NCBI GenBank assembly: GCA_024137785.1
Contig: JAHRHZ010000084.1
Location: 7,344,093-7,408,092, forward strand
From: Ginglymostoma cirratum
Taxonomy: Eukaryota
Length of the DNA stretch: 64,000 nucleotides
Direction: 5' to 3'
In this document: positions 29,161-53,062 of the stretch, one piece after another
Numbering within the stretch: position 1 is the stretch's first letter
Layout: each line of letters starts with the position of its first letter
Position numbers and translations under genes: made by a program
Notes under the pieces: generated by a model
The model's input: only the letters and a program-made list of their open reading frames with translations
The model's database searches: none
Told to the model about the DNA's origin: nothing

Positions 29161-29174
29161 GGCTATACCATTTG

Positions 29175-31770
29175 CAAGTGAGTAAAGAACCTGCCTCTGA
29201 CATCTATCTTAAATCTATCACCCCTCAATTTGCAGCTATGCCCCCTCATACTAGCCGACGTCATCATCCGAGGAAAAAGATTCTCACTGTCCCCCCTATC
29301 TAATACTCTGATCATTTTGTAGGTCTCTATTAAATCCCCTCTTAGCCTTCTTCTCTCCAATGAGAACAGACCCAAGTCCCTCAGCCTTTCCTCATAAAAC
29401 CTTCGCTCCAGACCAGGCAACATCCTGGTAAATCTCCTCCGCACCTTTTCCAATGCTTCCACATCCTTCCTGTAATGGGGCGACCAGAACTGTACGCAAT
29501 ATTCCCAGTGAGGGCGCACTAGCGTTTTGTACAGTTGCAGCATGACATTACGGCTCCGGAACTCAATCCCTCTAAAAATGAAACTTAACACACCGTATGC
29601 CTTCTTAGCAGCACTATCAACCTGGGTGGCAACTTTCAGGGATCTATGTACCTGGGCACCAAGATCCCTCTGCACATCCACACGACCAAGAATCTTTCTA
29701 TTTACCCAGTATTCTGCCTTCCTATTATTCTTCCCAAAGTGAATCACCTCACATTTATCTGCATTGAACTCTATTTGCCACCTTTCAGCCCAATTCTGCA
29801 GTTTATCCAAGTCTCCCTGCAACCTGCAACATTCTTACACACTGTCCACCACTCCACCAACTTTAGTGTCATCTGCAAACTTACTAACCCATCCACCTTT
29901 GTCTGCGTCCAAGTTATTTATAAAAATGTCAAACAGCAGTGGTCCCAAAACAGATCCTTGTGGCACACCACTAGTAACCGGACTCCAGGCTGAATATTTT
30001 CCATCAACCATCACTCTTTGCCTTCTTTCAGAAATCCAGTTTCTAATCCAAACTGCTAAATCTCCCTCAATCCCGTGCCTCCGCATTTTCTCCAATAGCC
30101 TACCATGTGGAACCTTATCAAAGGTTTTACTGAAGTCCATGTACACCACGTCAACTGCCCTACCCTCATCCACGTGCTTGGTCACCTTCTCAAAAAACTC
30201 AATGAGGTTTGTGAGACACGACCTGCCCTTGACGAATCCATGTTGACTATCTCCAATCAAATTGTTGCTTGCTGGATGATTATAAATCCTATCTCTTATA
30301 ATCCTTTCCAAAACTTTTCCTACAACAGATGTAAGGCTCACTGGTCTATAATTACCTGGGTCATCCCAACTGCCCTTCTTGAACAAGGGCACAACATTTG
30401 CTATCCTCCAGTCCTCTGGTACTAAACCTGTAGACAATGACGACTCAAAGATCAAGGCCAAAGGCTCCGCCATCTCCTCCCTAGCTTCCCAGAGAATCCT
30501 TGGAAAAATCCCATCCAGCCCAAGGGATTTATCTACCTTCACACCTTCTAGGATTGATAACACCTCCTCCTTACTAACCTCAATCCTTTCAACTCTAATA
30601 GCCCGTATGTCAGTCTTCTCCTCTACCATATTCTCCTTTTCCTGAGTGAAAACAGATGAGAAATATTTGTTTAGCACCTCTCCGATCTCCACAGGGTCCA
30701 CACACAACTTCCCACTTCTGTCTTTGACTGGCCCTATTCTTACCCTAGTCATCCTTTTATTCCCCACATACCTATAGAAAGCTTTAGGGTTCTCCTTAAT
30801 TCTACCTGCTAATGACTGCTCGTGTCCCCTCCTTGCTCTTCTTCACTCTCTCTTTAAATCCTTCCTAGCTAATCTGTAACTCTCCATCGCCTCATCTGAA
30901 CCATCTCGTCTCAATGTCGCATAAGTCTCCCTCTTCCGCTTAACAAGAGATACAATTTCTTTTGTAAACCAAGGTTCCCTTACCTTATCACTTCCTCCCT
31001 GCCTGAGAGGGACATACCTATCAAGGACACACAATATCTGTTCCTTAAACCAGCTCCACATTTCGATTGTCCCCATCCCCTGCATTTTGCTACCCCATTC
31101 TATCCCTCCTAAGTCTTGCCTAATCGCATTATAATTGCCTTTCCCCCATCTATAACTCTTGCCCAGTGGCATGTTCCTATCCCTTTCCATCGCTAAACTA
31201 AACGTAACTGAATTATGGTCACTTTCTCCAAAGTGCTCACCTACCACCAAATCAAACACCTGGCCTGGTTCATTACCAAGTACCAGATCCAGTGTGGCCT
31301 CCCCTCTTGTCGGCCCTTTGACATACTGTGTCAGGACACCCTGCTGCACACATTGGACAAAAACCGATCCATCCGACGTACTAGAGTTATAGCATTTCCA
31401 GTCAATGTTGGGGAAATTAAAGTCTCCCATAATGACCATCTTGTTCCTTTCACTCCTGCCCAGAATCGTTTTGCTGATCCTCTCCTCCACATCCCTGGAA
31501 CTTTGCGGAGGCCTATAAAAAAAACTCCCAGCAGTGTGACCTCTCCTCTCCTGTTTCTGAACTCAACCCATACCACCTCAGTAGACAAGTCCTCGTCAAA
31601 AGTTCTTTCAGCCACCGTTATACTGTCCTTGACTAACAAAGCCACACCTCCCCCTCTTTTACCACCTTCCCTGATCTTTATGACAGATCTAAACCCTGGA
31701 ACCTACAACATCCATTCCTGACTCTGCTCTATCTACATCTCCGAAATGGCCACAACATCGAAGTCCCAAA
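29175..31770 (-). mobile_element. CR1 LINE, ORF2 (APE endonuclease end plus RT) broken into 4 ORFs, truncated at both ends
   Basis: Motifs MGDFNFPNIDW, TLDLVL, SDHNSV, SGVPQGSVLGPLLF and FADDTKVGG. It stops at GRFFT without a 3' UTR or tail. Confidence 0.95.
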
Positions 31771-34056
31771 GTACGTTTACAGGTATTCACATCTGCCACT
31801 TTGATGAAAGACTGACCTATCTGCATTCATATGTAACACTTCATTACCTCCCTTATGATAAGTTCCAACATCTGTCACACTGATTAGCACAGGCATATGT
31901 GAAAGAAATTGTGCACACAATATGCCCCATTCACAAAAACAGAAAGCACACGTTTTTTTCTACAACGAAATGCTCCAATAGCTCTTCTTGAAGTGCTTTC
32001 ACTGTCACAACGCTGGGAAAGACGGCGGGCAACTAGCAAACTGAAAGAAATGACGCACAATTAGCAATGTGTATCAGTCCAAAAAATCTGAAGGTTATTT
32101 TGTTGGAAAAAATATTGGCCAGACACTGGGAGATCATGACATGGAAGCGCACTAAACTGAGAAGGCGGGGATCCATGGTATTTTATCTCTTGCTCAGAAG
32201 AACTAGCCCAGGGCCGTGTCCGTTCGGTGGATTAGCTGCGGGAGGCGCAAAGTTATAGGGATAGAGTAGGGGGTGGTGGGTCTGGGTGGGCCCACTTCGG
32301 AGGGTTGGTGTGGACAGATACGCTAAATGGCCTTCGTCCCCATTGTAGGAATTTTAAGATTCTATGACGTTTTCGTGTAACTTTATGACTTTGTGGAACA
32401 CACGGCAAATATTAAATAGAACAAAAGCTAAAAGAGTTTGCGCAGTCTCACACTTCTCCCAATCATCAGGAAGTAGCGCTAAAATTGTCTTGTCTCGAAA
32501 ATAAAGCCGGAATACACTTCATTCGTCCCCACCAACTGTTCTTCCAAACAATCGGAATATTCTTCTCTCCATCACCACCCACACGTTACTCCACTCTCCA
32601 CAGCTTCTCTTCCCCACTTGTGTGAATAATAAAACTCAAGGGTAGTGCCTGGAACAAGTAGTTTAGATGCTTTTGACTGGAAGCTAGTCAAAACTGGAAG
32701 CTAGAATGATTGTTTTGGATGAATAAACATGCGAGGAATATCGAGGGAAACAAAGAAATGGAGACTGTTTTCACTAAAAGATCTGCCTCCATAATTTTGG
32801 TTTTACACAAAAAAAATTGATGTAAAATTTACTTTGTTTTCATAGTTGATCATTATCCCTCATTTGAAAGCTATCTACAACGAAAATGTAACCCTGATAC
32901 AACCCTGGAATGGAAAAAAAAATCCCAACGTCAACCATGCAAATGCTGTCGATTTTCATCAAACCAAACAAGCAATATTCCCCATTGCAAAGGCAGTTGA
33001 GAGTCAACCACATTAATGTGTATCTGAAGACACGCTTCGGCCATATCAGAAAAAGCAAGTAGATTTCCTTCCCAAAAGGACATTAGTGAACCATATTGTA
33101 CTTCTGGGCTCTCAATGTTACTTGCCACTTATAAGCCCAAGACTGAAAGGTGTTTTGGCATTGCTGCGTTTGGACATGTCCAAATTCAGTTTCTGAGAAG
33201 TTGTAAGTATTAACAACTATTCAGCAATTATCAGTAAACATGTGCACTTTTAATTTTATGCTGCAGGGAAGATTATTAAGAAGTAGGTGAGATGGTTGGG
33301 CCAGAACATTGGCCTGTCCTGCTGCAATATCCTGGGTTCTGAAATAATTGACAGACAAGAAAAAACGCAATGATCTTCCCTGTGGCAAGTATAAATCCAA
33401 TCAATGGAGAGTTATATTTACTTTTTACGCCACTCCACTGTGTCTGATTCCCATTGACTTTGCAGTTTGGGTTTCCTTCAGACCATCCATGGTCAATGGC
33501 TGTCTTTATATCAAGCGCAGTAGCTCTCATCTCACCTGCGGCTCTGAGACGATGCTTGGGCAAAGCTCAAATGTGCTCCAAGCAAGAGTAGATTTGATGA
33601 AATTCACCTTGAACCTCAGTGCGCAGATTGTTGTTGTGTTAATCTCACCTGATAGCACTGTTTATGACACCTTTCAGCTCGTTGCTGAAGATAAGGAGTG
33701 GGCTGATGGAGCATTATTTGTCCAGAATTGATTTCTTCTGTTTTTGTCTTAGAGCAGAGGATATTTAAATGGATTACCTTTCAAATTGTTGGGTAGATAC
33801 CACTGATGTGGTCATGTTGAAACAGTTTGGCTCGGGCCCTTACATATCCTGGAACACCAGTCTTTCGTGTTAATGTAAGGGGGTTGCCACACACCATCAT
33901 TCTTCCCACTGGCTGTGGAAAGGTACGTTTCAAACAACTGAGATACTGACAACCCGGTCTTGTGGAATAGAAGCTCCGTTCCAAGATAAATATCATGAGC
34001 GTCTTCCATTTTTTCATGAAAATGCCTGGAGAGAATAATTGATTTGTATATTTGCT

Positions 34057-35524
34057 AGAATTGCTAATGTTATCCCCTTGTTTATGAAGGGTAGCAAGGA
34101 TAATCCAGGTAATCCAGGTAATCCAGGTGGTGAGTCTGACGTCAGTGGTGGGGAATCTGCTGGAGAAGATACTGAGGGATAGGATCTACTTATATTTGGA
34201 AGAAAGTGGGCTTATTAGCGATAGGCAGCATGGTTTTGTTCAGGGAAGGCCATGTCTTACCAACTTGGTAGAATTCTTTGAGGAAGTGACAAAGTTAATA
34301 GATGAGGGAAGGGCTGGATATGTCATATACATGGACTTAAGTAAGGTGCTTGATAAGGTTCCACATGGTAGGCTGATGGAGAAAGTAAAGTAGCATGGGG
34401 TCCGGGGTGTACTAGCTAGATGGATAGAGAACTGGCTGGGAAATAGGAGACAGAGAGTTGTAGTGGAATGGAGTTTCCCAAAATGGAGAACTGTGACCAG
34501 TGGTGTTCCACAGGGATCTGCATTGGGAGCACTGTTGTTTGTGATATACATAAATGATCTGGAGGAAGATATAGATGGTCTGATTAGCAAGTTTGCAGAT
34601 GACACTAAGATTAGTGGAGTAGCAGATAGTGAAGGGGACTGTCAGAGAAGGCAGCAGAATATAGATAGATTGGAGAGTTGGGCGGAGAAATGGCAGAAGG
34701 GGTTCAATCCAGGCAAATGCGAGGAGATGAATTTTGGAAGATCCAATTCAAGAGCGAACTATATGGTAAATGGAAAAGCCCTGGAGAAAATTGATGCACA
34801 GAGAGATCTGGGTGTTCAGGTCCATGGTACCCTGAAGGTGGCAAAGCAGGTGGATAGAGTAGTCAAGAAGGCATACGGCATGCTTTCATTCATCGGATGG
34901 GGTATTGAGTACAAGAGTTGGTAGGTCATGTTACAGTTGTATAGGACTTTGGTTCGACCACATTTGGAATACTGCGTACAGTATTCTGGTCGCCACATTA
35001 ACAAAAGGATGTGAATACTTTGGGGAGAGTGCAGAGGAGGTTCACCAGGATGTTGCCTGTTATGGAGGGTGCTAGCTATGAAGAGAGGTTGAGTAGATTA
35101 GGATTATTTACATTAGAAAGACGGAAGTCGAGGGGGAACCTGATTGAGGTCTACAAAATCTTAAGCGGTATAGACAGGGTGGATAGCAAAAAGCTTTTTC
35201 CCAGACTGGGGGACTCAATTACTAGGGGTCACGATTTCAAGGTGAGAGGGGAAAAGTTTAAGGGAGATATGCATGGAAAGTTCTTTACGCGGAGGGTGGT
35301 GGGTGCCTGGAATGAATTGCCAGCGGAGGTGGTAAAGGCGGGCACGATAGTGTCATTTAAGGTGTATCTAGACAGATACATGAATGGGCAGGAGGCAGAG
35401 GGAGACAGATCATTGGAATATAGGCGATAGATTTAGATAGAGGACCTGGATCTGCATAGGCTTGGAGGGTCGAAGGGCCTCTTCCTGAGCTGTAATTTTC
35501 TTTCTTCTTTGTTCTTTGTTCTAT
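34057..35524 (+). mobile_element. CR1 LINE, 5'-truncated, with (TTCTTTG)n tail
   Basis: ORFs 34127-35430 contain QHGFVQGRPCLTNL, SGVPQGSALG and FADDTKISG. A local (TAATCCAGG)3 duplication lies at about 34101-34128. Confidence 0.95.
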
Positions 35525-40489: not shown

Positions 40490-41102
40490 GGTACTGCAGA
40501 TGCTGGAGAATCCGAGATAACAAGGCGTGGGGCTGGATGAACACAGCAGGCCAAGCAGCATCACAGGAGCAGGAATACTTGACATTTCGGGCCTAGACCC
40601 TTCATCAGAAANNNNNNNNNNNNNNNNNNNNNNNNNNNNNNNNNNNNNNNNNNNNNNNNNNNNNNNNNNNNNNNNNNNNNNNNNNNNNNNNNNNNNNNNN
40701 NNNNNNNNNNNNNNNNNNNNNNNNNNNNNNNNNNNNNNNNNNNNNNNNNNNNNNNNNNNNNNNNNNNNNNNNNNNNNNNNNNNNNNNNNNNNNNNNNNNN
40801 NNNNNNNNNNNNNNNNNNNNNNNNNNNNNNNNNNNNNNNNNNNNNNNNNNNNNNNNNNNNNNNNNNNNNNNNNNNNNNNNNNNNNNNNNNNNNNNNNNNN
40901 NNNNNNNNNNNNNNNNNNNNNNNNNNNNNNNNNNNNNNNNNNNNNNNNNNNNNNNNNNNNNNNNNNNNNNNNNNNNNNNNNNNNNNNNNNNNNNNNNNNN
41001 NNNNNNNNNNNATGAAGGGTCTAGGCCCGAAATGTCAAGTTTTCCTGCTCCTGTGATGCTGCTTGGCCTGCTGTGTTCATCCAGCCCCACGCCTTGTTAT
41101 CT
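40490..41102. repeat. Near-identical inverted repeats flanking the assembly gap (young Penelope-type element)
   Basis: About 40515-40605 is the reverse complement of 41012-41102, with only about 2 mismatches. Confidence 0.88.
40612..41011. other. Assembly gap (N run)
   Basis: Run of n characters; the true size is unknown. Confidence 0.99.
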
Positions 41103-41793
41103 GGGGCTTTTCTAAGCTTGTTTCTCCTCGCACTTCCATCTCCAGGTATCGCCAAACACAGTGTTGGGGATATAACTTGTGTATCATGTGGACTAACAGC
41201 TTCAACTGAAAAATAATTGGAAATGTCTTTCTGTTTTTTACCTCCAGCCAAAATAAAGTTCAAACTGTCCTCATCAGCTCTGAAGTGGAGAACTGGAGAT
41301 GAATATAATTATCAATCCAGTGATTGCTGCTGCAAAACCCATATGTTTGAAGGTTGTTAAAGATGACGGTGGTATGAAACTCAGAGATCCCAGGATAAGC
41401 AGTTGCTTACGTGAAGACGAACAGCTTAGATAAAGAAGCTGGAGTACTGCAGCCAGAAGTGATATTTTCAGCAGTAAGCTAACACTAAAAGGCAAGTGTT
41501 GATAAAGGAGGTTTTTGCAACACAACCTGGTGACTGAAAACAGAACAAAACCGCTGATCTTCAGATTGAAACATTTCAGCAGTGCGTTAGGATGGGTTCT
41601 CTGACTAACGAACCCCCACGGAACAGTACAAACACATCGAATAAGCCACATCAGTCATGTGGTATCGCATGTTATGGTCTCATGTTTAATATTTCTACCT
41701 ATGAAACTCATTTGTTCCTACTCCCCCACCCGGCCGGTCAGAATACTGCCCTCGTTTACATCAAGCAGCCCACTCTTTTATCTCATTTGCAAA

Positions 41794-41848
41794 ATGTTGG
41801 TGAGAGCAACAATTCTGTTCATGGCTTTTCTGGGTATGACATGTTCAG
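41794..41848 (+). CDS. Gene B exon 1, signal peptide MLVRATILFMAFLGMTCS
   Basis: ATG in AAAATG context, hydrophobic 18-mer, and phase-1 donor TCAG|GTACTC. A 208-nt intron follows before the V exon, and the splice creates GAC (Asp) in frame. Confidence 0.8.
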
Positions 41849-44800
41849 GTACTCTTAAACGTTACTAACTGCTTTTTGGAATAACTTAGAATGTAATTCA
41901 TATTTACGGCATCTATGCATTGCAAATTTAGATGCCCTGCTTCTCCAATTCAATGCGCGTCATCATTCTCAATTGTTCTTGTATTTCATTCCTCCGTTGT
42001 TTTTCCATGTCTTCTGTCTGCAATTAGTACCATCGCTTTCACTTTTTTTTTCATAGACGCGAAAGTAACTTCGAGCAAAGTAGATCAGTTTCCGAAGCTC
42101 TTGAAGGCGGCCAGAGGTGACAATGTTTCCATGTTCTGTACTTTTCCCATATTTGAAGAGGTTCCTGAAGTATTTTGGTGGAGACACAACGAGGAATTGT
42201 TTTTGGAACCAGACAGCAGAAAACGTTTTGATGTTCAGAAAGGAAGGGGCTCACTTCATGTTTTCAATGTCGCTCTTCCAGACTCCGGAATGTATCATTG
42301 TAAGATAAAATATCAGCAAACGACACTTCGAGCTGAAGGTGGATCATTGCTGACAGTGTGCGGTAAGTAAAACTGCATCAGGTGCAGGCAGTTTATGTGA
42401 TCTGACTTTTTATAATTACAGAAAAATCGAGTGATAGCATATTAGCTTCACACTTTTGGCTGGATGTCGTCCCCGTTGACCTCGCTGTTCAACAGCTATT
42501 GATTTGCTTCGCTTGTTGGCGCCATTTCTCAAGATCAAATCCACTGCTCATTGTGATCATGGTGTGGAAGTGCCGGTGTTAGACTGGGGTCGACAAGGGC
42601 AGAAATCACGCACCAGGTGATAGTCCAACACGTTTATTTGAAAACATAAGCTTTTGGGGCCTCAGTCTGAAGAAGGACTGAGGCTCCGAAAGCTTGTGAC
42701 TTCAAATAAGCCTGTTGGTCTATAACCTTGTCTCGTGTGATTTCTGTATTTGTCATAATGACATTGTACTGTGCTATGAACGTAATGAGTGTCTTTTAGC
42801 TGCCGGAACAGTTGATATTGAGTCAAGAGAATGAAACAGGATAACTGTTGAAATCTTAGGATGAAGTTAATTCATGGAATAAGATAAAATGAAGAACTGC
42901 AGAAGCTGGAAATCTGAAACAAAGACAGAAATAGCTGGAGAAACTCGGCATGTCTGGTTGTATCTGTGTGAGCTGACACAGAGTCCAGCGATCCTTCTTC
43001 AGAATAGTTCTCGAACAGGTAACTCACTTTTCTCTTCACAAATACCCTCAACAGAAAAGGAAGCAAATTTGGGACTGATTTGCGGAGGAACCTCTTCACG
43101 CAAAGGTTGTGAATCTATGGAATCCCCTGCCAGTGATGCATTGGAGGCTACCTACCTCGTTGGATGTTTTAAGACAAAGATAGATGTTTGAATACTCAAG
43201 AAATTAAGGGTTATGATGAATGGACGGGTAAGTGGAGTTGAGTCCACAAAAATATGAGCCATGATCTTATTGATTGAAGAGCGGGCTCGGCGGGTCAGAC
43301 GGCCTACTGCTACAACTATTTCTTATCTTCGAATGTGGTCAGACCGACTGAGTTTCTCCAGCAATTTCCATCTTTGTATTATAGGTTCCCTATGGGTGTG
43401 GAAACAGGCCCTGCCGCCCAACAAGTCCACAGTGACCCTCAGAGCATCCCACCCAGACCCATTGCCCTATAAAAGCACCTAATCTACACATCCCTGAACA
43501 CTGCGGGTAATTTAGCATGGCCAATCCACCGATCCTGCACACCTCTGGACTATTGGAGGAAACCAGAGCACCCGGAAGAAACGCAAGCAGGCACGGGGAG
43601 AATGTGCAAACTCCACACAGACAGTCGCCCAAGGATGGAATCGAACCCTGTTCACCGGAGCCTGCTCGATTTACCTCTAACCAAAATAATGTTGCTGAGA
43701 TGTGACAGTGGAAACAAGGTTAATACAAGAACAATGTACCCATGTATTGAAAATTTAGAATGCTAACAGAAATTACTTGAAACGTGTCTGAGCATCTACA
43801 GAGGTAATACATGCACAAGAATTAAAAACAAGAGTGGGCCATTCGTCCCTCAAGTTTATTTGGCCATTCGATTAAATTATGGCTGATCTGATTGTGGTGT
43901 CAACCGCACATTCCTGTCCACCTTGATATCCTTGGACTTCCTCATTAATCAAAAACGCAATTGATGTTTCAGGTCATAATCTTTCATCAGAATATTTTTA
44001 GAACCTCCTACATCAATTCTTTTCTACATGGTTACATACAGCACCCAATCAGCGCCTACAAGTTGCATTTATTTTAAGGTGAATGATAATATACCACAGC
44101 CATCAATATTCACCAAATACAAGATAATTTTTCGACCTCCAAATTGCCGATTGAAACATGCTGTAGCAAATCCTTCAAACTTTGAGATGGATAGCAAAGA
44201 AAATTAATACTGTGGATCAATGGAATAGAAAAACATTGGACAAAGGGAGTTGAGATATAGTTCAACCATCACCTAAGTGAACAGTGGAGTAAGTTCAAGG
44301 ATGGTATTGCTTAGTGTTTTGGCTGCGCATTTTCTCAACACTGAAATGCCTTTTTTTTTAAACAACCAAATTACATGATTCAGCGTGATGGCAAGCATTG
44401 ATCTGGCTCTCAGAGTTTGATTATATCCCCAATCCTAAAGCTTTCAAGACAGTAAAATTACCCATTGGCTCTGTTGACTCTGCAGTTCGCCAACTGGATC
44501 CTCTCTGATGTAGGCACAACAGGCAATGTGAATGAAGAACAGTACCAAGCATATCTAAAAGCGTTCGTGCTCCTGCATTCGTAATTTATTATTTCGATGC
44601 AACGGGACTTAAGACAGGAGAACAAGATAATATTTTTTCTCCACGAGAATTCTGTGACATCTGAAGCAGATTCATGGCGAAAATGAAACATTTCTCAGCT
44701 TTTTCTGGCAGTAACAGTTAGCATAAATTTGGAAGTGAATCAAATGTCTAATTTAATAATTCCCTCGCATTACAATTGAGGAGCCAAAAATGTGTAGACA

Positions 44801-47800
44801 ACAGGTGTTAAGGATATTGCTTGTAATAAACATCAGAACAATGTAAACCCACAAATATTATTCTCAGCTAAGCACTGAATGCAGACTGAGAGTCCATAAG
44901 TTCACTTTAGTAAATGCATCATTTAGAATTGATATTTCAAAGAGAGTAGGTTCAGGCCAAGAGGGAAAAATGAATTGGGGACATAAATGACTCGACCATG
45001 TTCTTATTAATGGTTGGATCAATCTCAAAGGGTCGAATTGCCTGCCCATTGGACGCCCAGCTTTAGCTTTTAATTCTGATGCGCCCCCCCCCCCCAGGCA
45101 GAATCTGTTCCAAAAAAAAATTCAACAAAGTGATTTCTCTTACAGAGCGTTGACGTCTGGGATTACGTTACACTTGCAATTTATGACAGATTTTCTCCGC
45201 AGGTTCATCCTTCCTGTGCATTGTTTGAAAAACATCCCAACATTTTTGCCATGCATTTCTTTAAAAATAATAACAAAGACCACGTCTAAAATACAGTAAC
45301 AACGAAAACTGTTGTCACATTAAGAATGGCACAGTATTGGTGTGGAAGGGGGCGGATTGAAAAGTGAAAGAAAAGAATGCAAATTAACCTTTTTTAACGT
45401 TTTACTTTCTGTTATAGTTCCTCCAACCCTCCTGAAAATCATTTCCATGGAAGGGATTTCAGGGAATAATTTGACATTCGAGTGTAAAACGACTTCCTTT
45501 TACCCAGAGGATTTAGGAATCTCCTGGTTGAGAGATGGTGTCAAAATGCAGGCCGGAATAGAAACTGTGAAAAACAAGACCGTGGATGGTCTTTATGAAG
45601 TTACTAGTTCGTTGGAAGATGCACAACCCGTTCGGAGTGGTGCAGTTTATACCTGCCTGGTATCTCATGCCTGTCTTAAGGTGGCCACCAGCGTCAGCTA
45701 CACCTTTAACCGAGGTAAGATTGAAAATGTACCCAATACGGAGTTGAGTGCATGGTGAGAGGTAAAAACTTAGATGTGCATTCTTAAGGCATTGGACTAA
45801 CTCTAACTCTAAGACGTCGAGTAAATGTGCATGGAGTTCATTCTCAATGTCAAAGAAATTGAAACAAAGTAAAATATTCTGAGACGTTTTGCAGATGTAG
45901 CAGGGCGACTAGTTTCCTAAAACGTCCTGAAACGGAAAGTTGATGTGAAAACTACTCAAAAGTTGACAACTCAACAGTTTTATTATGCTAAATGAAATCA
46001 ATGTGTCGATAAAATTGTTCCTTTTCACTTGAGTAACTTATGCAACTTGTACATGTGTGTCGTTTATAAAACTTAGCTGATCTCTGCCAACAATATCTTC
46101 AGTTGCCTGCAACCTACACTTGGAAAATACTGGCCTCCCAGTCTCCCGTTGTGTCTTTCCTTCTTTAAGGTGCCTTTTGAACCTTATTTCTCTCTGTCTT
46201 AAGATTACTTTATGTTGAGCGGACAATGCTGTGTACAGTGCCTTTGAATTATTAACTTGGTTAAAGGCGCAGTTTGATTACAATTTCTGCTTGCAAATAA
46301 GAGTTGCAGTAGGTGCTTTCTGAGAAGGCTGGAGAAAGGCGCCATAAAGCATACAAAATCCTTATAGGTGTTGACAGTGTGAATGAGAAAAGTGTACTTC
46401 CGCTGGCGGACCGCCTAGGACCAGAGAACACAGTTTCAAAATAAGGTGAATGGGAATTTCTTCATCCAGAATCTTTGGAATTCCCCACCCAGAAAGCTGG
46501 GAAAACTCAGTCACTAAGAGTATGAAATACTGAGATCGACAGAGTTCCAAATGTTAAATGAAATGTAGGTAGTGCGAGAAAATAGCACCGTGGAAAAACA
46601 ATCATGATCTAATTGAATGACGGAGCCTGTTTCAAGGTCTCAGTGTCTATCCCCGCTCCTGTTGTCTATGTTCCTTTGTAACTGCCATTAGGGGATGAAA
46701 AATTTGCCAGATCTTGCAGCTGTTGCACATCAGTCTGGTTTGAGACAATGAGCAAATAAGTGCAAATTCCTTTACTCATAGCAAACAGCTCTCCTATACT
46801 GAGAGAACTTACCCATGCTTTTAAGTCATGAAATGCGTTTTCTCCATACAATGCTTTACTGAGCTGCAGTGAATGTCTTCTGGTGCACGTTAAGGCCCTT
46901 GCACAGCTACACCCCCACTCCCACCCCACCCCCACCCCCCATCAAATTAAAATGGTCCAACTTTTCTCACAGTGGGGTTATCCTGGGTGACACCTTTGCA
47001 ATTTATCATCGTGTGCATTATGCTCTGCACATGTGACTCACTGTGTTCCAAACTTGTTCACTTCCTTCAGGTGTTCATCCTGTAGGACAAGGTAGCACTC
47101 TTCCAATGATCGTTGGATATGCAGGAGGAACATTTGCAATGTTACTAATCTTGATCGTCTTCATTAGACTGAAATTGAAGGCATCAGCTGGTGAGAACCT
47201 TCCATATTTCGCCGTGTGCTCTTTATTTCCTTAGACCCAGTGTAAAAAAGCATTAAGAGCAGGTGAGGAATCAAGGGCTGTGGCTTTAAATTTTGGAGTT
47301 GAGAATCTGAGGCGGATATGAACTGCAAATATTTCACCTTCTTATTCGAACTGGACATTCGGTTTGTTCACCTCCGTGTTGCTCCAGTCGAAATTATGTG
47401 TTTTCTATTATTGTTCAGTGCGGATCCAGTTCCCAAGGAAGAAACTTTTATAAACTAGATTTTAGCATTTGGCATTAAAGTGGATGTTTTCGAACTAATA
47501 ATCAGATATGCGCATCATTAGAATTTATTTCCATTGTAATTTGTGGTGCAAATGGGCCGCCGACTTGCACTTTGCACTATCACACAGAGACTAACTCTGC
47601 ATCATTGAGTGCAGTGCAACTTGAGCAGTGAGCAGGTAAAACACAACGTACTACTGTCGGTACAGCTGAATACCTTCGAACTGTGGTTTTCTGTACTATA
47701 CATATAAATTAAATGTGTCTAACAGCGAAGGCATGACATTAGATTTGTTGATACATTAATTCTATCATTAACAGTGCATTACTTTGCTTTGTATTAGGCA

Positions 47801-49121
47801 ACAGGAGAAATTCGATGGACGCAGGTGAAAATGATGAACAGGTAGGACGACAATATTCTTTCAATTCCAAACAAAAATCGTAAGGGAGGTCGGCACATAG
47901 AAAGGGTAGCAACGAATTATGCATTCAGTCGAAATCATTTAGATTTCATAGAACATCGAATTCTATAGCCCAGGATGAAGCTCCCGTACTTCTGCCACCT
48001 CGATGAGATAATAAATCAATTTGTTCCACTCTCGTGTTTTACCTGTATATCTCATTTTTCGTGTCAATCCAATAACTTTTTTGAAATTTCCTATCGAATC
48101 TCTTCCAGTCACTGTCTCAGTTCGTAGGCAGCTCACCACAACGGGCTGCAGAGACAAAACAAAGCTCTCCACAGATTATTTACCTATAATACCGAAAGCG
48201 TGTCGCCTGGATCCGAAACAACATATCCATGAAAATAGTTTTGCCTCATTTACTTCATCACAGACTCTGAAAATGTTAAACCTTTATGTTAAACCTCCCC
48301 TTAAATGTACTTGATCTAAGTAAAATAATCATTTCCAGTCTCCCGAACATCATTGAAATCCCTGAAAGCTGGGACCCTTCCAGTAAATCTCTGCTATATC
48401 CTCTCGAAAACCTTGAGATTTTCCTGAAGTCGTGCCTGGAGTGGGACACAATATCTCAGGTCTTTTATGAACTATATTCCTTTGTTAGTAGTTCTGGGAG
48501 CAGAGTGTATGTGTGGGGTCGGGTGAAGTGAAAATAATGGCTTTGGAGGTGTTGCGAGAGGGTTTTTGCCAAGAACATAATTGTTGGTCGCTATTTAGAG
48601 GATGTAAGCTTCCAGAAATGTTATAAGAACAGCCTAAGGCTTCGCTGTCAGATCTCCTAATAGATTGCGCTAACTATGGAATAAGAAAACCGCCATCTCC
48701 ACAAAAATGTCAAACAGAGCGAGATAAATAAGGAAATAATAAATGTCTACTGGTCATCAGTTAGATGTTAAAATGTAGTTCAATGAATTAAACGCCCTGG
48801 GTTTCATATTTAAAATATTATTCTCGACTACATTGGTGAGATATTAGATGCAAATCACTGACAGTTGACAGGATGCAATTGCGACTTTGCTTGATTGACT
48901 ACTGCCTGAATGTTAACAAGTCTGGTATTCAGTTACAGTTGGTGGTGGCTGGCTGCATAATCAAACTTGCTGCTAATGATATTTCTTACCTCATATTCTA
49001 GCTTAGACAAGAACCAACGAAAGAAAATGTCGCTTATGCTACTGTAAACTTAAAAGCCAAAAAATATGCCGCCAAACCCAGGCTCAAGGAAGAATATGTT
49101 GTCTATTCCCAGGTAAAATGA
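41794..49121 (+). CDS. Gene B: type I membrane IgSF receptor, leader-V(J-like)-C1-TM-cytoplasmic tail with two ITIMs (SIRP/NKp30/B7-H6-like architecture), 6 coding exons, 313 aa
   Basis: Hand-spliced exons 41794-41848, 42057-42362, 45418-45714, 47071-47190, 47798-47841 and 49002-49121. All introns are GT..AG, phases are 1,1,1,1,0, and the total is 942 nt with no internal stop. Confidence 0.88.
42057..42362 (+). CDS. Gene B exon 2, Ig V-type domain with J-like G strand
   Basis: Acceptor tttttttttcatag| and donor G|gtaagt. Translation: DAKVTSSKVDQFPKLLKAARGDNVSMFCTF...VFWWR...GSLHVFNVALPDSGMYHC...AEGGSLLTVC. It shows the B-strand Cys, C-strand Trp and DSGxYxC motif. Confidence 0.93.
42560..42755. 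repeat. Imperfect inverted-repeat element of a second Penelope-type family in the V-C1 intron
   Basis: gacaa..cagaaatcac..caggtgatagtccaaca..tttatttgaa..aagcttt mirrors aaagctt..ttcaaataa..tgttggtctataacc..gtgatttctg..ttgtc. Confidence 0.72.
43385..43660 (-). mobile_element. V-SINE (HE1-like) in the V-C1 intron of gene B
   Basis: Reverse complement of the V-SINE core GGAGTTTGCACATTCTCCCCGTG...CCGGGTGCTCTGGTTTCCTCC, plus the tRNA B-box GGTTCGATTCC. Confidence 0.8.
45418..45714 (+). CDS. Gene B exon 3, Ig C1-set domain
   Basis: Acceptor ttttactttctgttatag|, donor G|gtaaga, phase 1/1. C1 hallmarks: LTFECKTTSFYPEDLGISWLRDG, DGLYEVTSSL, YTCLVSHACL. Confidence 0.93.
47071..47190 (+). CDS. Gene B exon 4, stalk plus transmembrane segment
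   Basis: Acceptor cttccttcag| and donor G|gtgaga. Translation GVHPVGQGSTLPMIVGYAGGTFAMLLILIVFIRLKLKASA is an uncharged hydrophobic run followed by basic stop-transfer residues. An in-frame alternative acceptor (catcctgtag|) gives start 47086. Confidence 0.88.
47798..47841 (+). CDS. Gene B exon 5, 44-nt cytoplasmic exon GNRRNSMDAGENDEQ
   Basis: Acceptor tttgctttgtattag|, donor CAG|gtagga, phase 1/0. An independent paralog of identical length lies at 6006-6049. Confidence 0.8.
49002..49121 (+). CDS. Gene B exon 6, ITIM exon LRQEPTKENVAYATVNLKAKKYAAKPRLKEEYVVYSQVK*
   Basis: Acceptor cttacctcatattctag|, phase 0. VAYATV (49029-49046) and VVYSQV (49098-49115) match the ITIM consensus (I/V/L/S)xYxx(L/V). 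Stop TGA at 49119-49121. Confidence 0.85.
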   Translation, partial: LRQEPTKENVAYATVNLKAKKYAAKPRLKEEYVVYSQVK

Positions 49122-49259
49122 AAGAATTGTCAAATATAAAACGACCATGTCTCTCTCATACGAGGTCAACATAGTGAAAATTGAGTTAATTGCAAAAAAA
49201 AAAGACACTGTACAATACAAAGGGAACGGGGTGCTCTAATTTTGACTTGATGAAACAGA

Positions 49260-49826
49260 ACATGCGGCAGTTATCCAGATGCCAAGGTTCATAATGTGAC
49301 GACCCGGGTTCAAACCTCACAAGGGCAGCGAATGGAACTGAATTGAGTTGATGAATCTGGAATGTCAAACCTCACTAGGACAGCTAATGGAAGTGAATTA
49401 AGTCGATGAATCTGGAATGTAAAGCTAATCTCAGTAAACTTTAATCATGCGAACTGTCATTAATTGTTATTGGGAAAAAATTCCCTGTTTCACTTGTGTG
49501 GAGGATTGGCAAGACCGCTTCTGGAGCATTGTGCACAATACTGGTCACCCTTTTCATGGAAAGGTGTTAATACATTGAAAGCAGCTTAGAGAAGGCTTAC
49601 TAGGCTAATGCCTGAAATGAGCGGATTCCCTTACGTGACCTTATGGCGATAAGACATGGTCTTCAGGGAAGGAAGCTTGCCATCCTTACCTGCTCTACCC
49701 TACATGTAAGTCCAGAATCACGACAATGCAGTTGATTCTCAACTGCTGTCTGGGCAATTAGGAATGCGCAATGAATGCTAGCCTAGCCATTGATGGCCAC
49801 AAACTATGAATGAACTAACAAAAAAG
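49260..49826 (+). mobile_element. Same SINE family just 3' of the gene B stop, interrupted by a CR1 fragment (about 49497-49640)
   Basis: gacccgggttcaaacc head, ggaaggaagcttgccatccttacct body, gggcaattagg..atgaatgaactaacaaaaaa end. Confidence 0.68.
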
Positions 49827-49829
49827 AAG

Positions 49830-51815
49830 TAAGCCATTTCGATCAGCGAATCTGCTCCACCATTCAATAAGGTCAAGCTTGATCTGACAAATCTCCACTT
49901 TCCTGGCTCTTCCCGAAAACACTTTATCGTTCACTAACTAAAAATCTATTTTGGCCTTGAACATTTTTAATAACCCAACCTAGGCAGCCTTTGCAGAAAA
50001 TAATTTCACATACTCACTGCCCTCCAAAAGAAGAATTTCCTCTTCATCTCAGGTTTAAATATGCAACCACTTATCCGAGGATTATGCCCTCTGGACCAGG
50101 ACTCTGACATGGGGAAACAAATTGTCCTCATCCATCAAGTTAAGTTCCCTAAGAATCTTGTACGTTTCAGTCAGGTGTCATTCTTATAAATCCCAATGAG
50201 TACAGGCCCAGCCTACTCACCACTCCGCAAAAGAGATTTCCTTCTTACCTTCTTTACCAGTGAACTTTCTCTGGATATCCTGCAATGCCAATATATCTTT
50301 TCTGGGATAAGGGGAAGAAAACTGTTCAAGTATTTCAGCTACGGTTTAACTTGAGACTTGCATGCTTTTAGCAAATATCCCTTCATTTATATTCCATTCT
50401 CATCGAAAAGTAGGCCAGTATTCCCTTTGCCTTCTCGACTACCTGCTGTAATTTGATGCTAGCTTTTTGTAACTCATGCACGAGGACTCCAAAATCCCTC
50501 TGCTCCGTAGATTTCTGCTGTCTTTCTGCACTTAAATAATACTCAGATCTTCTATTCCTTCTCCCAAAGTGCATAACCTCACTTTTTTCCCATATTATAT
50601 TCCATCTTCCATAATTTTGGCCATCCTCGTAACTGGACTACATCCCTCTAAAGACTTTTTGTGTCATCCTCACCGCTCATCGTCCCACCTACTTTAATGT
50701 TAACCACATGCTTGGCCATTGTACGTGCACTTTCCAAATCCAAGTCTTTAATGTTTACATTTGGAAAATTTGTGGCCCTACCACTAATCTCTATGGCACT
50801 CCATGAGAACCAGATTTCCATTCTGAAAATTCCCTCCCTCCCCCCATCCAAAACTCAGAGTCTCCTATTACTTCGCCAATTTTCTATCCACTTTAGTGTA
50901 CTGCGCCACAACCATGAGTTTTTATTTTATCTTATTAGGCGACCTAATGTGTGGCAGCTCTGAAAATATTTTCTGAAAATCCAAATATGTTAAATACACT
51001 GCTTCTCATTTATCTGCCCTCCTTCTGACCTCTTGAAAGAATTTCTGGAAGATTAATACTGGTGCATCCACTATCGTAGTTACTTCCCTAGCTATCCTAG
51101 GATGCATCCCATCAGATCCAAACTTATTAGTCTTATGTTCCATTAGTTTTCCAGATGCTTCTTCTCCAGTGATAGCTGTTGTATTTAATTCTTCTCCTCC
51201 ATTTGCCCTTGAATATTTAATACTGTGGAATGCTGTTAGTGTCTTCTACTGTGACAATTGATGCAAATTATTCATTCAAGTCTTCTACCATTCTCTGGTT
51301 CCCCATTGTTCTTTTTCACGCCTCCTTCTCTTTCGGGGCCTATGTTCAATTTGGCTTCTCTCTTCCTTTTCAAAAGCTATGGAATAACTAACAGGTATGT
51401 GTCTTCTGGAGTTTAGAAGAGTCAGAGGCGACTTAATTGAAACATATAAGTTCCTAACAGACTTGACCAGGTGGATGTGAAAGAATCTTTCTTTTTAATG
51501 TGAGAATCTAAAACTGGAGGCCGTAGTTTAAAAATGAGGGATCACCTATTTACAGCAGATACGAGGACATTTTTGTTTCTCTCCTCCGGTTGTAAGTCTT
51601 TGGAATTCCCTTCCTTAAATAGCAATATATGCAAAATTTTTAAATGTGTTTTAAGGCAGGGATAGGTAGATTCTCGATGACACAGTGGGTGAAAGATTAT
51701 CGGGGGTTTCAGGGACATAGAGTTCAGCACAAAATCAGGTCAGCGACTACCTTATTAAATGGTGGTGCCGGCTTGAAGGACCAAGTGGCTTGCTCTTATT
51801 TCTTACTTGCTTGTT
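49830..51815. mobile_element. Decayed CR1 fragments (about 49830-51370 minus; 51390-51815 plus)
   Basis: HFGRRNRR..EQRDFGVLVH, IKVGGTMSGEDD, and ctggagtttagaagagtcagaggcgacttaattgaaacatataag. Confidence 0.75.
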
Positions 51816-52933
51816 GGTAATGTCCTTTCGGGAAGAAAATCTGCTGCTCTTACCTGGCCTGGCCGACAAGTGACACAAGACTTTCATCCAGGTGATTGAT
51901 ATTTAACGATGATTAACATTTGATGTAGTCAACCATACACTCAGTTCAAAACAGTTAGCGATGGGCAGCAGTTGTTGACATTGTTACTGCCATCTTTATG
52001 CCATGAAAACAAAAGACAAAATTATGCCAGTGTTAGGGAATCGATGTCTCTTCTGCCGATTTGTTCGGGAAAAAAAATCAAGAGAGATATCAAACGGTCA
52101 GCTGGCTCTTACTATCAGTTTTAGACTGGAGTACAAACAAAACCAACAATATTTAATTTTATGGATTAGCAGTAAGAATGACAGCCCTGAACTGTAACTA
52201 TAGAAACTCACCTGGGAATAGTGGCTAATATCGATTTTACAGGAAAAGTACGGCACCAAGAGCAATCTGCATTACACCTATCCTGTTGAATCCAGCACCA
52301 GGACAAATACAAAACCAGACAGGCAAAGCAGGCTACTATCTATAGCCAAGAGCAGCTACATCTTCAATGTCGTTTGGTACCACACTAAACAGTAGGGAAT
52401 TGAAAGCTCAGGGATTTAACCTACCAACTGTATTGGGCCCGACCATTTCAGCCAAGGCTCACCATATTCACCCTAGGTCCCAGGGTTCTGAAAATCAGCA
52501 GCGGTGGGGTAAACGAGGTTGGAAATGTGACTTGAGGCCTTTCCATGGGATAACCACATCAAATCGACTGTCAGGGCTCAGAAATTGAACCTTGAAAGGG
52601 ATGTTTTGCAATACCAGAATTCCAACCACATTTAACACGCTGGCATTTGATTCCTTTCTATTTTAAAGAAGTAATAACCTGCTGTTTTAAATGGGCAATG
52701 CTAATATTCTGACTTATTTTACGAGAAGTTTAAAGCATAATACCAAGAATTTTTAGGCAGGGCTGTAGAATGGAGAGAGATCGCAGGTTGAAGACAATAC
52801 TAAATTCGGTTGCAATCTGAAGTTGGTACCTGATGAGAGGAAATTCCACCAAAGCCTTTTAATAAAACCTCGACTGCCTCTCACAATAAGTTGACGATGG
52901 CCTAATGGGTGATATTAAATTTTACATTCACAG

Positions 52934-53062
52934 ATCAAGAAAGGAAGCAGAAATAACAAACTGATTTACACGGCTCTGTAAGTGGCTGATTCCAAGAAAT
53001 CATCAAAACCCAAACTGCAAGACAATTCCACATTACATGCAAAAGTAAAGGTGACAAAGTAG
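52934..53062 (+). other. Second ITIM-type exon (alternative/additional terminal exon of gene B, or a relic): IKKGSRNNKLIYTAL*VADSKKSSKPKLQDNSTLHAKVKVTK*
   Basis: Acceptor tttacattcacag|, phase 0. It aligns without gaps to exon 6 (Y12, K21, K25-P26, L28, V38-K39). TAA at 52979-52981 follows LIYTAL directly. Exon and flanks are homologous to 13080-13325. Confidence 0.65.

What the first reader, a model, noticed from the sequence alone, without database searches (positions are those of the whole stretch)
41794..49121. Intact non-rearranging antigen-receptor-like inhibitory receptor (L-VJ-C1-TM-2xITIM)
Seen: six exons splice in phase to 313 aa, although the ORF track misses the last two exons and shows the others only inside longer ORFs. 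The V exon includes its own G strand (AEGGSLLTV, a degenerate GxGTxLTV) and I found no RSS. Known: C1-set domains occur mainly in Ig, TCR, MHC, beta2m, tapasin, SIRP and some B7-family proteins, and tandem ITIMs recruit SHP-1/SHP-2. Inference: a germline single V-C1 chain with an inhibitory tail, relevant to models of the pre-RAG antigen-receptor ancestor.
Basis: partly seen in the sequence, partly recalled or inferred. Interest (0 to 1): 0.78.

Follow-up and report, generated by a model that had tools for sequence, protein, structure and literature searches.

The report
Shark SIRP-like V-C1 inhibitory receptor gene
This looks like an intact cartilaginous-fish gene for a non-rearranging surface receptor with one variable-type and one constant-type antibody domain and an inhibitory tail; it belongs to a large family that databases predict under inconsistent names, so it is a useful but not unprecedented find.

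Summary
Six exons with GT-AG borders (41794-49121) add up to 313 codons. Pfam calls exon 2 V-set and exon 3 C1-set. No RSS adjoins the V exon. The tail has two VxYxxV motifs.

The model is probably one exon short. Exon 6 has a CAG|GTAAAA donor inside the second motif, and 52934-52981 matches the family's last exon (63% over 41 aa to a bamboo-shark protein). That gives 326 aa and a third motif, LIYTAL, followed by a premature stop.

The gene is not a lone relic:
- The scan has met this family repeatedly on other DNA of the same genome.
- Kin come from 14 shark, ray and chimaera species, under names such as "SIRP-alpha-like", "tapasin-related-like" and "NCR3LG1-like".
- The nearest is Chiloscyllium plagiosum P0155 (83% V, 82% C1; trees 100/99).

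It works like SIRP-alpha on paper, but it has one C1 domain and a short V that is not specially close to SIRP V. I therefore do not file it in the SIRP family proper.

Expression is untested: the two runs laid covered no exon. No paper on the family turned up.

The parts
41794..41848 (+). Exon 1: ATG and signal peptide (18 codons plus 1 nt, phase 1). The donor is CAG|GTACTC.
   Evidence: 60% identical over 15 aa to the leader of Heterodontus P0151 (E 0.007 in the small family database).
42057..42362 (+). Exon 2: short V-type Ig domain that includes its own G strand. Cys27-Cys81 are 54 residues apart, with a WW motif and an NVS glycosylation sequon.
   Evidence: Pfam V-set E 5.4e-9, I-set 1.8e-7. 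83% identical over 100 aa to P0155. The family-invariant G20, C27, W40, D75, G77, C81 and G95 are all kept.
42332..42358 (+). J-like G-strand motif AEGGSLLTV, a degenerate form of the family's GxGxGSxLTV. It is followed by Cys and the splice donor.
   Evidence: There is no adjoining RSS.
45418..45714 (+). Exon 3: the single C1-set Ig domain, starting with the PPT.LK motif and carrying NLT and NKT sequons.
   Evidence: Pfam C1-set E 1.5e-11. 82% and 79% identical to the two C1 domains of P0155. The invariant P2, C22, P29, W36, C79 and H83 are kept. It is the only C1-like exon between V and TM.
47071..47190 (+). Exon 4: stalk, uncharged transmembrane helix (about 47100-47165) and a basic stop-transfer stretch, RLKLK.
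   Evidence: 59% identical over 37 aa to Scyliorhinus P0157 (E 2.7e-11 in the family database).
47798..47841 (+). Exon 5: a short acidic cytoplasmic exon (14 full codons) that ends in phase 0.
   Evidence: Its likeness to the same position in relatives is weak and not significant (36% over 14 aa, E 0.22).
49002..49121 (+). Exon 6: the first ITIM pair. VAYATV lies at 49029-49046 and VVYSQ(V) at 49098-49115. An internal donor, CAG|GTAAAA, follows 49112. Read through, the frame stops at TGA 49119-49121.
   Evidence: 54% identical over 37 aa to P0155. Relatives have an exon boundary after the matching ...VYSQ.
52934..52981 (+). Probable exon 7, with acceptor ttttacattcacag|. It encodes 15 codons ending in the third ITIM, LIYTAL (52961-52978), and then TAA.
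   Evidence: Read with X at the stop, 52934-53059 is 63% identical over 41 aa to the last exon of P0155 (E 3.2e-14 in the family database) and 56% to Heterodontus P0038 and P0151.
52982..53059 (+). Cut-off remainder of the ancestral last exon, in frame behind the premature stop. The fourth tyrosine motif of relatives reads H instead of Y here.
   Evidence: 71% identical over 24 aa to P0155. Relatives have Q where the window has the stop.

Best explanation
The locus is an apparently intact gene for a type I membrane receptor of a family specific to cartilaginous fish. Its parts are a signal peptide, a short germline-joined V-type domain, one C1-set domain, an uncharged transmembrane helix and a tyrosine-motif tail.

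By homology the gene has seven exons, not six. Exon 6 most likely splices from the donor after 49112 to 52934, giving a 326-aa product with three ITIM-type motifs: VAYATV, VVYSQI and LIYTAL. The ancestral fourth motif was lost to a premature stop. The 313-aa form would then be an unspliced read-through variant.

Inferred mechanism: the V domain binds an unknown ligand. Src-family kinases phosphorylate the ITIM tyrosines. The first two lie 23 residues apart, which suits a tandem-SH2 phosphatase. SHP-1 or SHP-2 is recruited and damps activation of the cell.

This is the inhibitory arm of a paired-receptor system like SIRP-alpha/SIRP-beta. Other family members carry a different, charged transmembrane segment and no ITIM tail.

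Shown here: the exon structure, the domain types, the absence of an RSS, family membership and near-orthology to a bamboo-shark gene. Inferred: expression, use of exon 7, phosphatase recruitment and cell type.
For: - All borders are canonical and all frames are open.
- Pfam finds V-set and C1-set, and the invariant family residues are kept.
- Five of the seven exons match family proteins clearly: V 83%, C1 82%, TM 59%, exon 6 54% and exon 7 63%. The leader matches marginally (60% over 15 aa, E 0.007). Exon 5's match is not significant (E 0.22).
- Both the V tree (43 rows) and the C1 tree (39 rows) pair the window with C. plagiosum P0155 at 100/99 support.
- Of 45 family proteins, 38 have a predicted transmembrane segment and 25 have at least one strict ITIM behind it.
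- The tails of relatives are built of repeated [xxYAxL ... xVYSQ] units, with the unit boundary after ...VYSQ where the window has its internal donor.
- No AATAAA or ATTAAA lies in the 1,080 nt after the 49121 stop; one lies at 54136, behind exon 7.
- Neighbouring copies show what decay looks like. The C1 pseudo-exon at 62014-62304 has 2 stops in 97 codons, while this gene has none in 313 codons.
- ITIM recruitment of SHP-1/SHP-2 in SIRP-alpha is described in PMC12975943 (passages read).
Against: - There is no expression evidence. No RNA run was listed as holding the stretch. The two runs of the same species label laid on 47060-53059 gave depth 0 on exons 4-7 and matched only intronic repeats at under 99% likeness.
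- The last exon carries a premature stop and a Y-to-H change, and the J-like motif has lost a glycine kept by at least 90% of the family rows aligned. Both could be early decay.
- The flanks hold decayed copies.
- No protein of this gene itself appeared in the three word searches.
- Use of exon 7 rests on homology and splice signals only.
- Phosphatase binding, ligand and cell type are inferred by analogy.
Confidence: 0.7

Rival explanations
1. The gene is a young pseudogene or a silent copy. It still reads open but is no longer expressed or selected, like the decayed copies around it.
For: - Exon 7 has a premature stop and has lost the fourth tyrosine motif.
- The J-like motif is degenerate.
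- A C1 pseudo-exon lies at 62014-62304, a C1 remnant at 22358-22567 and a TM-like exon with a stop at 4822-4932, all in the same window.
- No exon was covered in the two runs laid.
Against: - There is no stop or frameshift in 313 codons, and all ten splice signals of exons 1-6 are intact.
- All family-invariant residues are kept.
- The degenerate J motif and the extra cysteines are shared with the bamboo-shark protein P0155, so they are old and tolerated.
- The truncation still leaves three ITIM-type motifs.
- The runs laid were small contig sets, only guessed to be RNA, and cannot show silence.
Confidence: 0.18
2. The gene is a true member or ortholog of the SIRP family (SIRP-alpha proper) and binds a shark CD47.
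For: - NCBI's pipeline names many relatives 'tyrosine-protein phosphatase non-receptor type substrate 1-like'.
- The full-length family profile hits SIRP-alpha 2wng at 105 bits (E 3.6e-29) and SIRP-gamma 4i2x at 93.5 bits, aligned colinearly over V plus C1.
- The C1 exon alone hits SIRP-gamma at E 9.7e-11.
- The tail has paired tyrosine motifs, and inhibitory and charged-TM forms coexist.
- From memory, the tail's paired-tyrosine layout resembles that of SIRP-alpha. No call showed this.
Against: - There is one C1 exon, not two.
- In the V-only profile search no SIRP V domain is among the best 60 chains, while TCR V and PD-L1 V are.
- Ig light chains score as well per V-C1 unit (69-86 bits) as SIRP-alpha does over three domains.
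- The same pipeline calls other members tapasin-related, NCR3LG1-like, Ig lambda-like, PD-L1-like or MHC class II alpha-like.
- The word search limited to the tail found only ray proteins and no bony-vertebrate SIRP (7 hits among 46 candidates). That search can only find proteins sharing exact 5-residue words.
Confidence: 0.1
3. The gene is a direct relic of the pre-RAG antigen-receptor ancestor, closer to Ig/TCR than other non-rearranging V-C1 genes are.
For: - It has a V with a J-like strand in one exon, followed by C1, the topology of one antigen-receptor chain.
- The family profile aligns over V plus C of lambda and kappa chains in one stretch (69-71 bits).
- The V-only profile aligns end to end (positions 2-99) with a TCR V domain including its J part.
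Against: - The V is short and scores nearly as well as I-set.
- The V exon alone finds no Ig, TCR or SIRP V at E 0.01 or better in the PDB.
- The UrIg and UrIg2 genes of the same animals have the linkage and multi-C structure on which the published candidate rests (PMC12227049; abstract and passages read). That main text mentions neither ITIM nor SIRP.
- The same argument has been in print for SIRP since 2009 (PMC2785349).
- This member has a degenerate J motif.
Confidence: 0.04

Closest known systems
SIRP-alpha (SHPS-1/PTPNS1) and the SIRP paired receptors
   Same: - Both are non-rearranging type I receptors with an N-terminal V domain carrying a J-like strand, a membrane-proximal C1-set domain, and a tail with paired ITIM-type tyrosines.
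- Both families also hold members with a charged transmembrane segment and a short tail.
- Profile hits to 2wng and 4i2x support the likeness.
- The SIRP architecture and signalling are as described in PMC12975943 and PMC2785349 (passages read).
   Different: - It has one C1 domain instead of two.
- Its V is about 12 residues shorter than an Ig lambda V, and no SIRP V domain is among the best 60 chains found by the V-only profile.
- The family is known only from cartilaginous fish in my searches.
- The ligand is unknown.
- Synteny could not be tested.
Ig light chains and TCR chains (rearranging V-J-C1)
   Same: They share the V-then-C1 topology. The family profile aligns across V plus C of lambda and kappa chains (69-71 bits in one stretch; 86 bits for single light chains).
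   Different: There is no RSS and no separate J segment. The V is short. The gene has a transmembrane segment and an ITIM tail, and it belongs to a multigene family of germline genes.
UrIg / UrIg2 (shark non-rearranging antibodies)
   Same: All are non-rearranging VJ exons followed by C1-type domains in the same animals. UrIg2 (9dmx) is the top-scoring chain for the C1 exon, summed over its three matched C domains.
   Different: UrIg2 has one V and three C domains and forms disulfide-linked homodimers (PMC12227049, abstract and section headings). The window gene has one C1, a transmembrane segment and ITIMs. Its best single UrIg2 domain score is only 27.6 bits.
B7 family (PD-L1, B7-H6/NCR3LG1, CD276)
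   Same: These are V plus C ectodomains with a transmembrane segment. PD-L1 V is among the best single-domain hits of the V profile (42 bits), and CD276 scores 85.5 bits with the full profile. Some relatives carry these names.
   Different: Pfam prefers C1-set (1.5e-11) to CD80-like C2-set (7.5e-5) for exon 3. From general knowledge and not tested here, B7 ligands lack the multi-ITIM tail.
Teleost NITRs (novel immune-type receptors); recalled from memory, no call
   Same: They are a multigene family of non-rearranging V(J) receptors with ITIM-bearing inhibitory members and charged-TM activating members.
   Different: As I recall, NITRs have no C1-set domain. I ran no sequence comparison.

Membership tests
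Chondrichthyan V-C1 receptor family (predicted by pipelines under mixed names; no name in print that I found) | Short V domain with the WW(K/R) motif, the invariant G20, C27, W40, D75, G77, C81 and G95, and a J-like G strand | tested here: met
   All invariant columns are kept, but one glycine of the J-like motif that at least 90% of the 13 aligned rows keep is lost. 83% identity to P0155.
Chondrichthyan V-C1 receptor family (predicted by pipelines under mixed names; no name in print that I found) | A single C1-set domain directly after V, beginning PPTPLK-like | tested here: met
   38 of the 43 rows of alignment A2 match Pfam C1-set; one of those rows is the window's V exon itself, which cannot match. 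The window has one C1 exon between V and TM.
Chondrichthyan V-C1 receptor family (predicted by pipelines under mixed names; no name in print that I found) | A tail built of phase-0 exons, each carrying an [xxYAxL ... xVYSQ] unit | tested here: met
   Exon 6 and exon 7 match the corresponding units of P0155, P0151 and P0038.
Chondrichthyan V-C1 receptor family (predicted by pipelines under mixed names; no name in print that I found) | Groups inside the family in a tree | tested here: met
   It pairs with P0155 at 100/99 support in both the V and the C1 tree, inside a shark clade. The trees hold family rows only, so they do not test the family's outer limits.
SIRP family | N-terminal V-set domain | tested here: met
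   V-set E 5.4e-9.
SIRP family | [quoted passage not shown] | tested here: not met
   The gene has one C1 exon. The two C1 domains in the Gnomon model P0155 are 93 of 98 identical, which points to a recent duplication or a model artefact.
SIRP family | V domain specifically related to SIRP V (the CD47-binding domain) | tested here: not met
   The V-only profile search of the PDB lists no SIRP chain among its best 60 of 2,773 matches. The V exon alone finds none at E 0.01 or better. CD47 binding itself cannot be tested here.
SIRP family | Cytoplasmic ITIMs that recruit SHP-1/SHP-2 (alpha type) | tested here: inconclusive
   The motifs are present. Binding cannot be tested. Tail homology to bony-vertebrate SIRP-alpha was not shown (one search found ray proteins only; one search found no PDB chain).
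SIRP family | Orthology or synteny with the SIRP locus | not testable with these tools
Rearranging antigen receptors (Ig/TCR) | An RSS flanking the V segment, and a separate J segment | tested here: not met
   The G strand is inside the V exon, which ends in a splice donor.
UrIg / UrIg2 | A V followed by three C domains that forms homodimers (V-C1-C2-C3), linked to the MHC or the antigen-receptor complex | tested here: not met
   The window gene has one C1, a transmembrane segment and an ITIM tail. Linkage cannot be tested. The paper's features are from PMC12227049.
ITIM-bearing inhibitory receptors (functional class) | (I/V/L/S)xYxx(I/V/L) motifs in the cytoplasmic tail behind an uncharged transmembrane segment. 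The motif definition is recalled. | tested here: met
   VAYATV and VVYSQV/I are in exon 6 and LIYTAL is in exon 7. The TM core has no charged residue.

The most novel reading that the evidence does not exclude
The chondrichthyan V-C1 family, this gene included, keeps the single-C1 state of the lineage that gave rise to the SIRPs, and stands near the V-C1 unit from which rearranging receptors were built. In that reading the unpaired cysteine at the V-C1 junction (shared with the bamboo-shark and chimaera proteins) would let the chains form disulfide-linked dimers on leukocytes. That would be a living model of a non-rearranging, signalling proto-antigen receptor with paired inhibitory and activating forms.
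Probability: 0.08. Interest if true: 0.75.

Novelty: new variant of a known kind. Interest (0 to 1): 0.4.

Why it matters
C1-set domains are almost confined to molecules of adaptive antigen recognition. SIRP-alpha's V-C1 layout has been used to argue that a myeloid V-C1 receptor stood near the origin of antigen receptors (PMC2785349).

Cartilaginous fish are the oldest lineage with that system. A large, fast-evolving family of V-C1 receptors there, with inhibitory and charged-TM forms, is the natural place to test that idea and to look for shark counterparts of paired receptors.

This gene is a clean, apparently intact inhibitory member with a near-ortholog in another shark order-mate. That makes it a good candidate for expression, ligand and SHP-binding studies.

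The value lies in the family more than in this locus. Databases already predict the family under inconsistent names, and the scan has met it many times on this genome.

Tried and rejected
Work that led nowhere or was rejected:
- **RSS.** The exact pattern gave 0 hits. A tolerant scan gave only background hits inside intron 2. Rearrangement is rejected.
- **Extra Ig exons.** tblastn of the six exon translations and of all fetched proteins under 450 aa against the window found no further V or C1 exon inside the gene.
- **UrIg kinship.** The C1 exon's top PDB chain is UrIg2, but only by summing three domains; the best single domain scores 27.6 bits. The architecture also differs, so this is rejected.
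- **Tail homology to SIRP-alpha.** The word search limited to the tail of P0150 found 7 proteins, all from rays. A PDB search with exon 6 found nothing at E up to 10. This is inconclusive, not negative.
- **Expression.** The look-up of sequencing runs listed no holder, only two runs of the same species label. Laid on 47060-53059 at 85% likeness, they covered no exon.
- **Literature.** Searches turned up no paper describing this shark family. Only the listed rows were looked at, for example 15 of 67. I did not ask for supplements. Those of PMC12227049 and PMC10751288 may list further VJ-C1 genes that I could not see.
- **Big HMMER search.** Of the 150 rows shown, 129 are proteins of 485-7,608 aa with two or more matched stretches. 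I set these aside as titin- or contactin-like multi-Ig proteins without further study. 21 short rows were kept as family-like.
- **Species label.** 'Nurse shark' comes from earlier scan notes. My own evidence shows only that the nearest protein is from Chiloscyllium plagiosum and that all named kin are cartilaginous fish.

Full report
**What is there.**
- E1 41794-41848: ATG and an 18-codon hydrophobic leader.
- E2 42057-42362.
- E3 45418-45714.
- E4 47071-47190.
- E5 47798-47841.
- E6 49002-49121: ends in TGA.

Every acceptor is a pyrimidine tract plus AG, and every donor starts with GT. E1 to E4 end in phase 1 and E5 in phase 0. The lengths add to 942 nt, which is 313 codons plus a stop.

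**Domains.**
- Pfam calls E2 a V-set domain (E 5.4e-9, profile positions 2-108 of 109, so the G strand is in the exon). I-set is close behind at 1.8e-7.
- Pfam calls E3 a C1-set domain (E 1.5e-11) against 7.5e-5 for the CD80-like C2-set.
- The two V cysteines are only 54 residues apart. In the profile alignment to a lambda chain, the lambda V carries about 12 extra residues between strands C and D. This is a short V that probably lacks C''.
- The G strand reads AEGGSLLTV (42332-42358). In an alignment of the window's V exon with 12 relatives the motif is GxGxGSxLTV, and the window has E where at least 90% of the rows have G.
- E4 encodes a stalk, an uncharged hydrophobic helix and RLKLK.
- E6 carries VAYATV and, 23 residues on, VVYSQV.

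**Not rearranging.** The exact heptamer-spacer-nonamer pattern is absent from the window. A tolerant scan of 41500-46000 found two weak sites, both in intron 2, at the background density of the window (24 sites in all; shuffles averaged 9.3). The V exon contains its own J-like strand and ends in a splice donor.

**A seventh exon.** The last codons of E6 read TCC CAG|GTAAAATGA, so a good donor sits inside the second motif.

Behind an acceptor at 52932-52933 lies an open stretch, 52934-52978, ending in LIYTAL and then TAA. Read with X at that stop, 52934-53059 is 63% identical over 41 aa to the last exon of a Chiloscyllium plagiosum protein, P0155 (E 3.2e-14 in my small family database). It is 56% identical to Heterodontus P0038 and P0151. 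Relatives have Q where the window has the stop, and Y where the window has H in the fourth motif.

In relatives the tail is a string of [xxYAxL ... xVYSQ] units, and the unit boundary after ...VYSQ falls where the window has its internal donor. No AATAAA or ATTAAA lies within 1,080 nt behind the 49121 stop; one lies at 54136.

I therefore think the main product has seven exons, 326 aa and three ITIM-type motifs: VAYATV, VVYSQI and LIYTAL. The 313-aa form would be a read-through variant. This rests on homology and signals, not on RNA.

**Relatives.** The one full HMMER search, run with the V exon, gave 674 proteins at E 0.001 or better. Of the 150 listed, 129 are long multi-Ig proteins, which I set aside. 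21 are short proteins matching in one or two stretches at 30-60% identity.
- 18 of the 21 carry a name, and all 18 are from cartilaginous fish. 3 come from unnamed ENA or Logan contigs.
- Word searches with the full-length kin P0038 and P0155 gave 17 proteins (E 1e-10 or better) and 24 proteins (E 1e-20 or better). All are again from cartilaginous fish.
- Fourteen species appear in all: Heterodontus francisci, Chiloscyllium plagiosum and C. punctatum, Scyliorhinus canicula and S. torazame, Heptranchias perlo, Mustelus asterias, Carcharodon carcharias, Mobula birostris and M. hypostoma, Hemitrygon akajei, Hypanus sabinus, Narcine bancroftii and Callorhinchus milii.
- Many copies of one species lie on one chromosome-sized contig.
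- The names given by sources are inconsistent: 'tyrosine-protein phosphatase non-receptor type substrate 1-like' (that is, SIRP-alpha-like), 'tapasin-related protein-like', 'NCR3 ligand 1-like', 'immunoglobulin lambda-1 light chain-like', 'PD-L1-like', 'class II DP alpha-like' and 'uncharacterized'.
- No row in these searches was a protein of the window itself.

**Nearest kin.** P0155 is 83% identical in V, 82% and 79% in C1, 54% in exon 6 and 63% in exon 7. The next-best V is 60% identical. Maximum-likelihood trees of the V exon (43 rows) and the C1 exon (39 rows, none dropped) both pair the window with P0155 at 100/99 support. The pair sits inside a shark clade with species-specific expansions. 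Ray clades and mixed shark-chimaera clades lie outside it.

The P0155 model has two C1 domains that are 93 of 98 identical, and it has no transmembrane exon. The window has only one C1 exon between V and TM.

**Family make-up.**
- All 43 rows of the family alignment (the window's V exon and 42 relatives) match Pfam V-set, and 38 match C1-set.
- By a crude script, 38 of 45 members have a transmembrane segment and 25 have at least one strict ITIM behind it.
- A subset (for example P0158, P0159, P0022, P0089, P0129, P0123 and P0163) has a different membrane segment with Arg and Asp/Glu-His and no ITIM tail.
- That is the pattern of paired inhibitory and activating receptors.

**What it resembles among solved structures.**
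- The C1 exon alone hits thousands of C1 domains. UrIg2 (9dmx) is top by summing three domains (best single domain 27.6 bits). A lambda constant domain scores 29.8 bits and SIRP-gamma reaches E 9.7e-11.
- The full family profile gives 69-71 bits for V plus C of lambda and kappa chains in one stretch, and 86 bits for single light chains. It gives 105 bits for three-domain SIRP-alpha (2wng), 93.5 for SIRP-gamma, 123 for four-domain UrIg2 and 85.5 for CD276.
- A V-only profile finds I-set proteins by summed score. Among hits to chains with one or two domains it finds a two-domain TCR single-chain construct (43 bits in one matched stretch, aligned over positions 2-99, so including the J part), the one-domain PD-L1 V (42 bits) and NCAM1 domain 1 (32 bits). 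No SIRP chain is among the best 60.

The ectodomain is thus a generic V-C1 unit, about equally far from light chains, SIRPs and B7 proteins.

**How it most likely works.** By architecture and tail it is an inhibitory receptor of the SIRP-alpha type. Ligand binding by V would be followed by tyrosine phosphorylation of the ITIMs and recruitment of SHP-1/SHP-2, as described for SIRP-alpha (PMC12975943, passages read). Nothing of this was or could be tested here.

**Membership.** It is a member of the chondrichthyan V-C1 family, with all features met. I do not file it in the SIRP family proper, for four reasons:
- It has one C1 instead of two.
- Its V is not specially SIRP-like.
- Tail homology to bony-vertebrate SIRP-alpha was not shown. 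One search found only ray proteins and one search found nothing; both searches are weak.
- Synteny could not be tested.

**Expression.** No listed run holds the stretch. The two runs of the same species label are small contig sets only guessed to be RNA. Laid on 47060-53059, they gave depth 0 over exons 4-7 and matched only intronic repeats between 49.5 and 52 kb, none at 99% likeness. This neither shows nor excludes expression.

**Intact or decaying.** In favour of function:
- There is no stop in 313 codons.
- All splice signals are intact.
- All invariant residues are kept.
- The odd features (the degenerate J motif and two extra cysteines) are shared with P0155.

By contrast, a neighbouring C1 pseudo-exon (62014-62304, 81% nt identity to E3) has two stops in 97 codons. 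Against function stand the truncated last exon and the lack of RNA evidence.

**Literature.**
- The idea that a non-rearranging V-C1 receptor stands near the antigen-receptor precursor is in print for SIRP-alpha (PMC2785349, passages read).
- The current shark candidates are UrIg and UrIg2, which have one V and three C domains and form dimers (PMC12227049, abstract and passages read). That main text mentions neither ITIM nor SIRP.
- My searches and a look into the whale-shark genome paper found no description of this family. Supplements were not seen.

**Earlier scan notes.** The scan has met this family many times on other DNA of the same genome. One cluster lies 0.3 Mb and another 7.3 Mb upstream on the same piece, and earlier follow-ups called it 'SIRP-like'. 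I treated these notes as leads. My own searches agree on the family and its taxonomic range, and are more reserved about SIRP membership.

**Verdict.** This is an apparently intact inhibitory member of a large V-C1 receptor family of cartilaginous fish. Pipelines predict the family, but I found it undescribed in the literature I could search. Interest is moderate.

Noticed in passing
window 62014-62304 (+): A C1-type pseudo-exon, 81% nt and 67% aa identical to exon 3, with two in-frame stops. No matching V exon was found between 53100 and 62000. It looks like the remnant of a downstream tandem copy.
   Followed up: partly
window 22358-22567 (+): A weak, stop-riddled C1-like remnant (E 1.4e-4 to Heterodontus P0097), probably an older decayed copy.
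   Followed up: no
window 4822-4932 (+): A TM-type exon like exon 4 (46% aa, 69% nt) with an in-frame stop. An earlier scan note reads it as the tail of the upstream neighbour gene.
   Followed up: no
window 24852-35430, both strands: Several long ORFs that look by eye like LINE reverse-transcriptase fragments. The N-terminal part of the public Heterodontus model P0123 matches them (E 4e-13 to 5e-14), so that model seems to have swallowed a transposon piece. I ran no Pfam scan.
   Followed up: partly
window 42359-42361 and within 45420-45713: Two extra cysteines: one as the last codon of the V exon (..LTVC) and one in the C1 domain (..SHAC..). Both are shared with bamboo-shark P0155. The junction Cys is also in chimaera P0164 and P0095. 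They may form an extra disulfide or a dimer bridge.
   Followed up: no
P0155 (Chiloscyllium plagiosum protein), residues 142-239 and 241-338: The public model has two C1 domains that are 93 of 98 identical and skips the transmembrane exon. This is either a recent exon duplication or a model or assembly artefact.
   Followed up: partly
family proteins P0158, P0159, P0022, P0089, P0129, P0123, P0163: These members share an alternative membrane segment with Arg near its start and Asp/Glu-His at its end, and they have no ITIM tail. They are candidate activating partners of the inhibitory forms.
   Followed up: partly
window 40527-41090: The N run 40612-41011 is flanked by near-identical sequence in inverted orientation. 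The ORFs entering it from both sides start with almost the same 26 residues. I did not fill or search the N run.
   Followed up: no
window 49460-52060 (intron 6 of the seven-exon model): Repeats in this stretch match many contigs of the two laid runs at 85-95% likeness, with depth up to about 2,000 in one bin. They are probably expressed or abundant transposon families.
   Followed up: no
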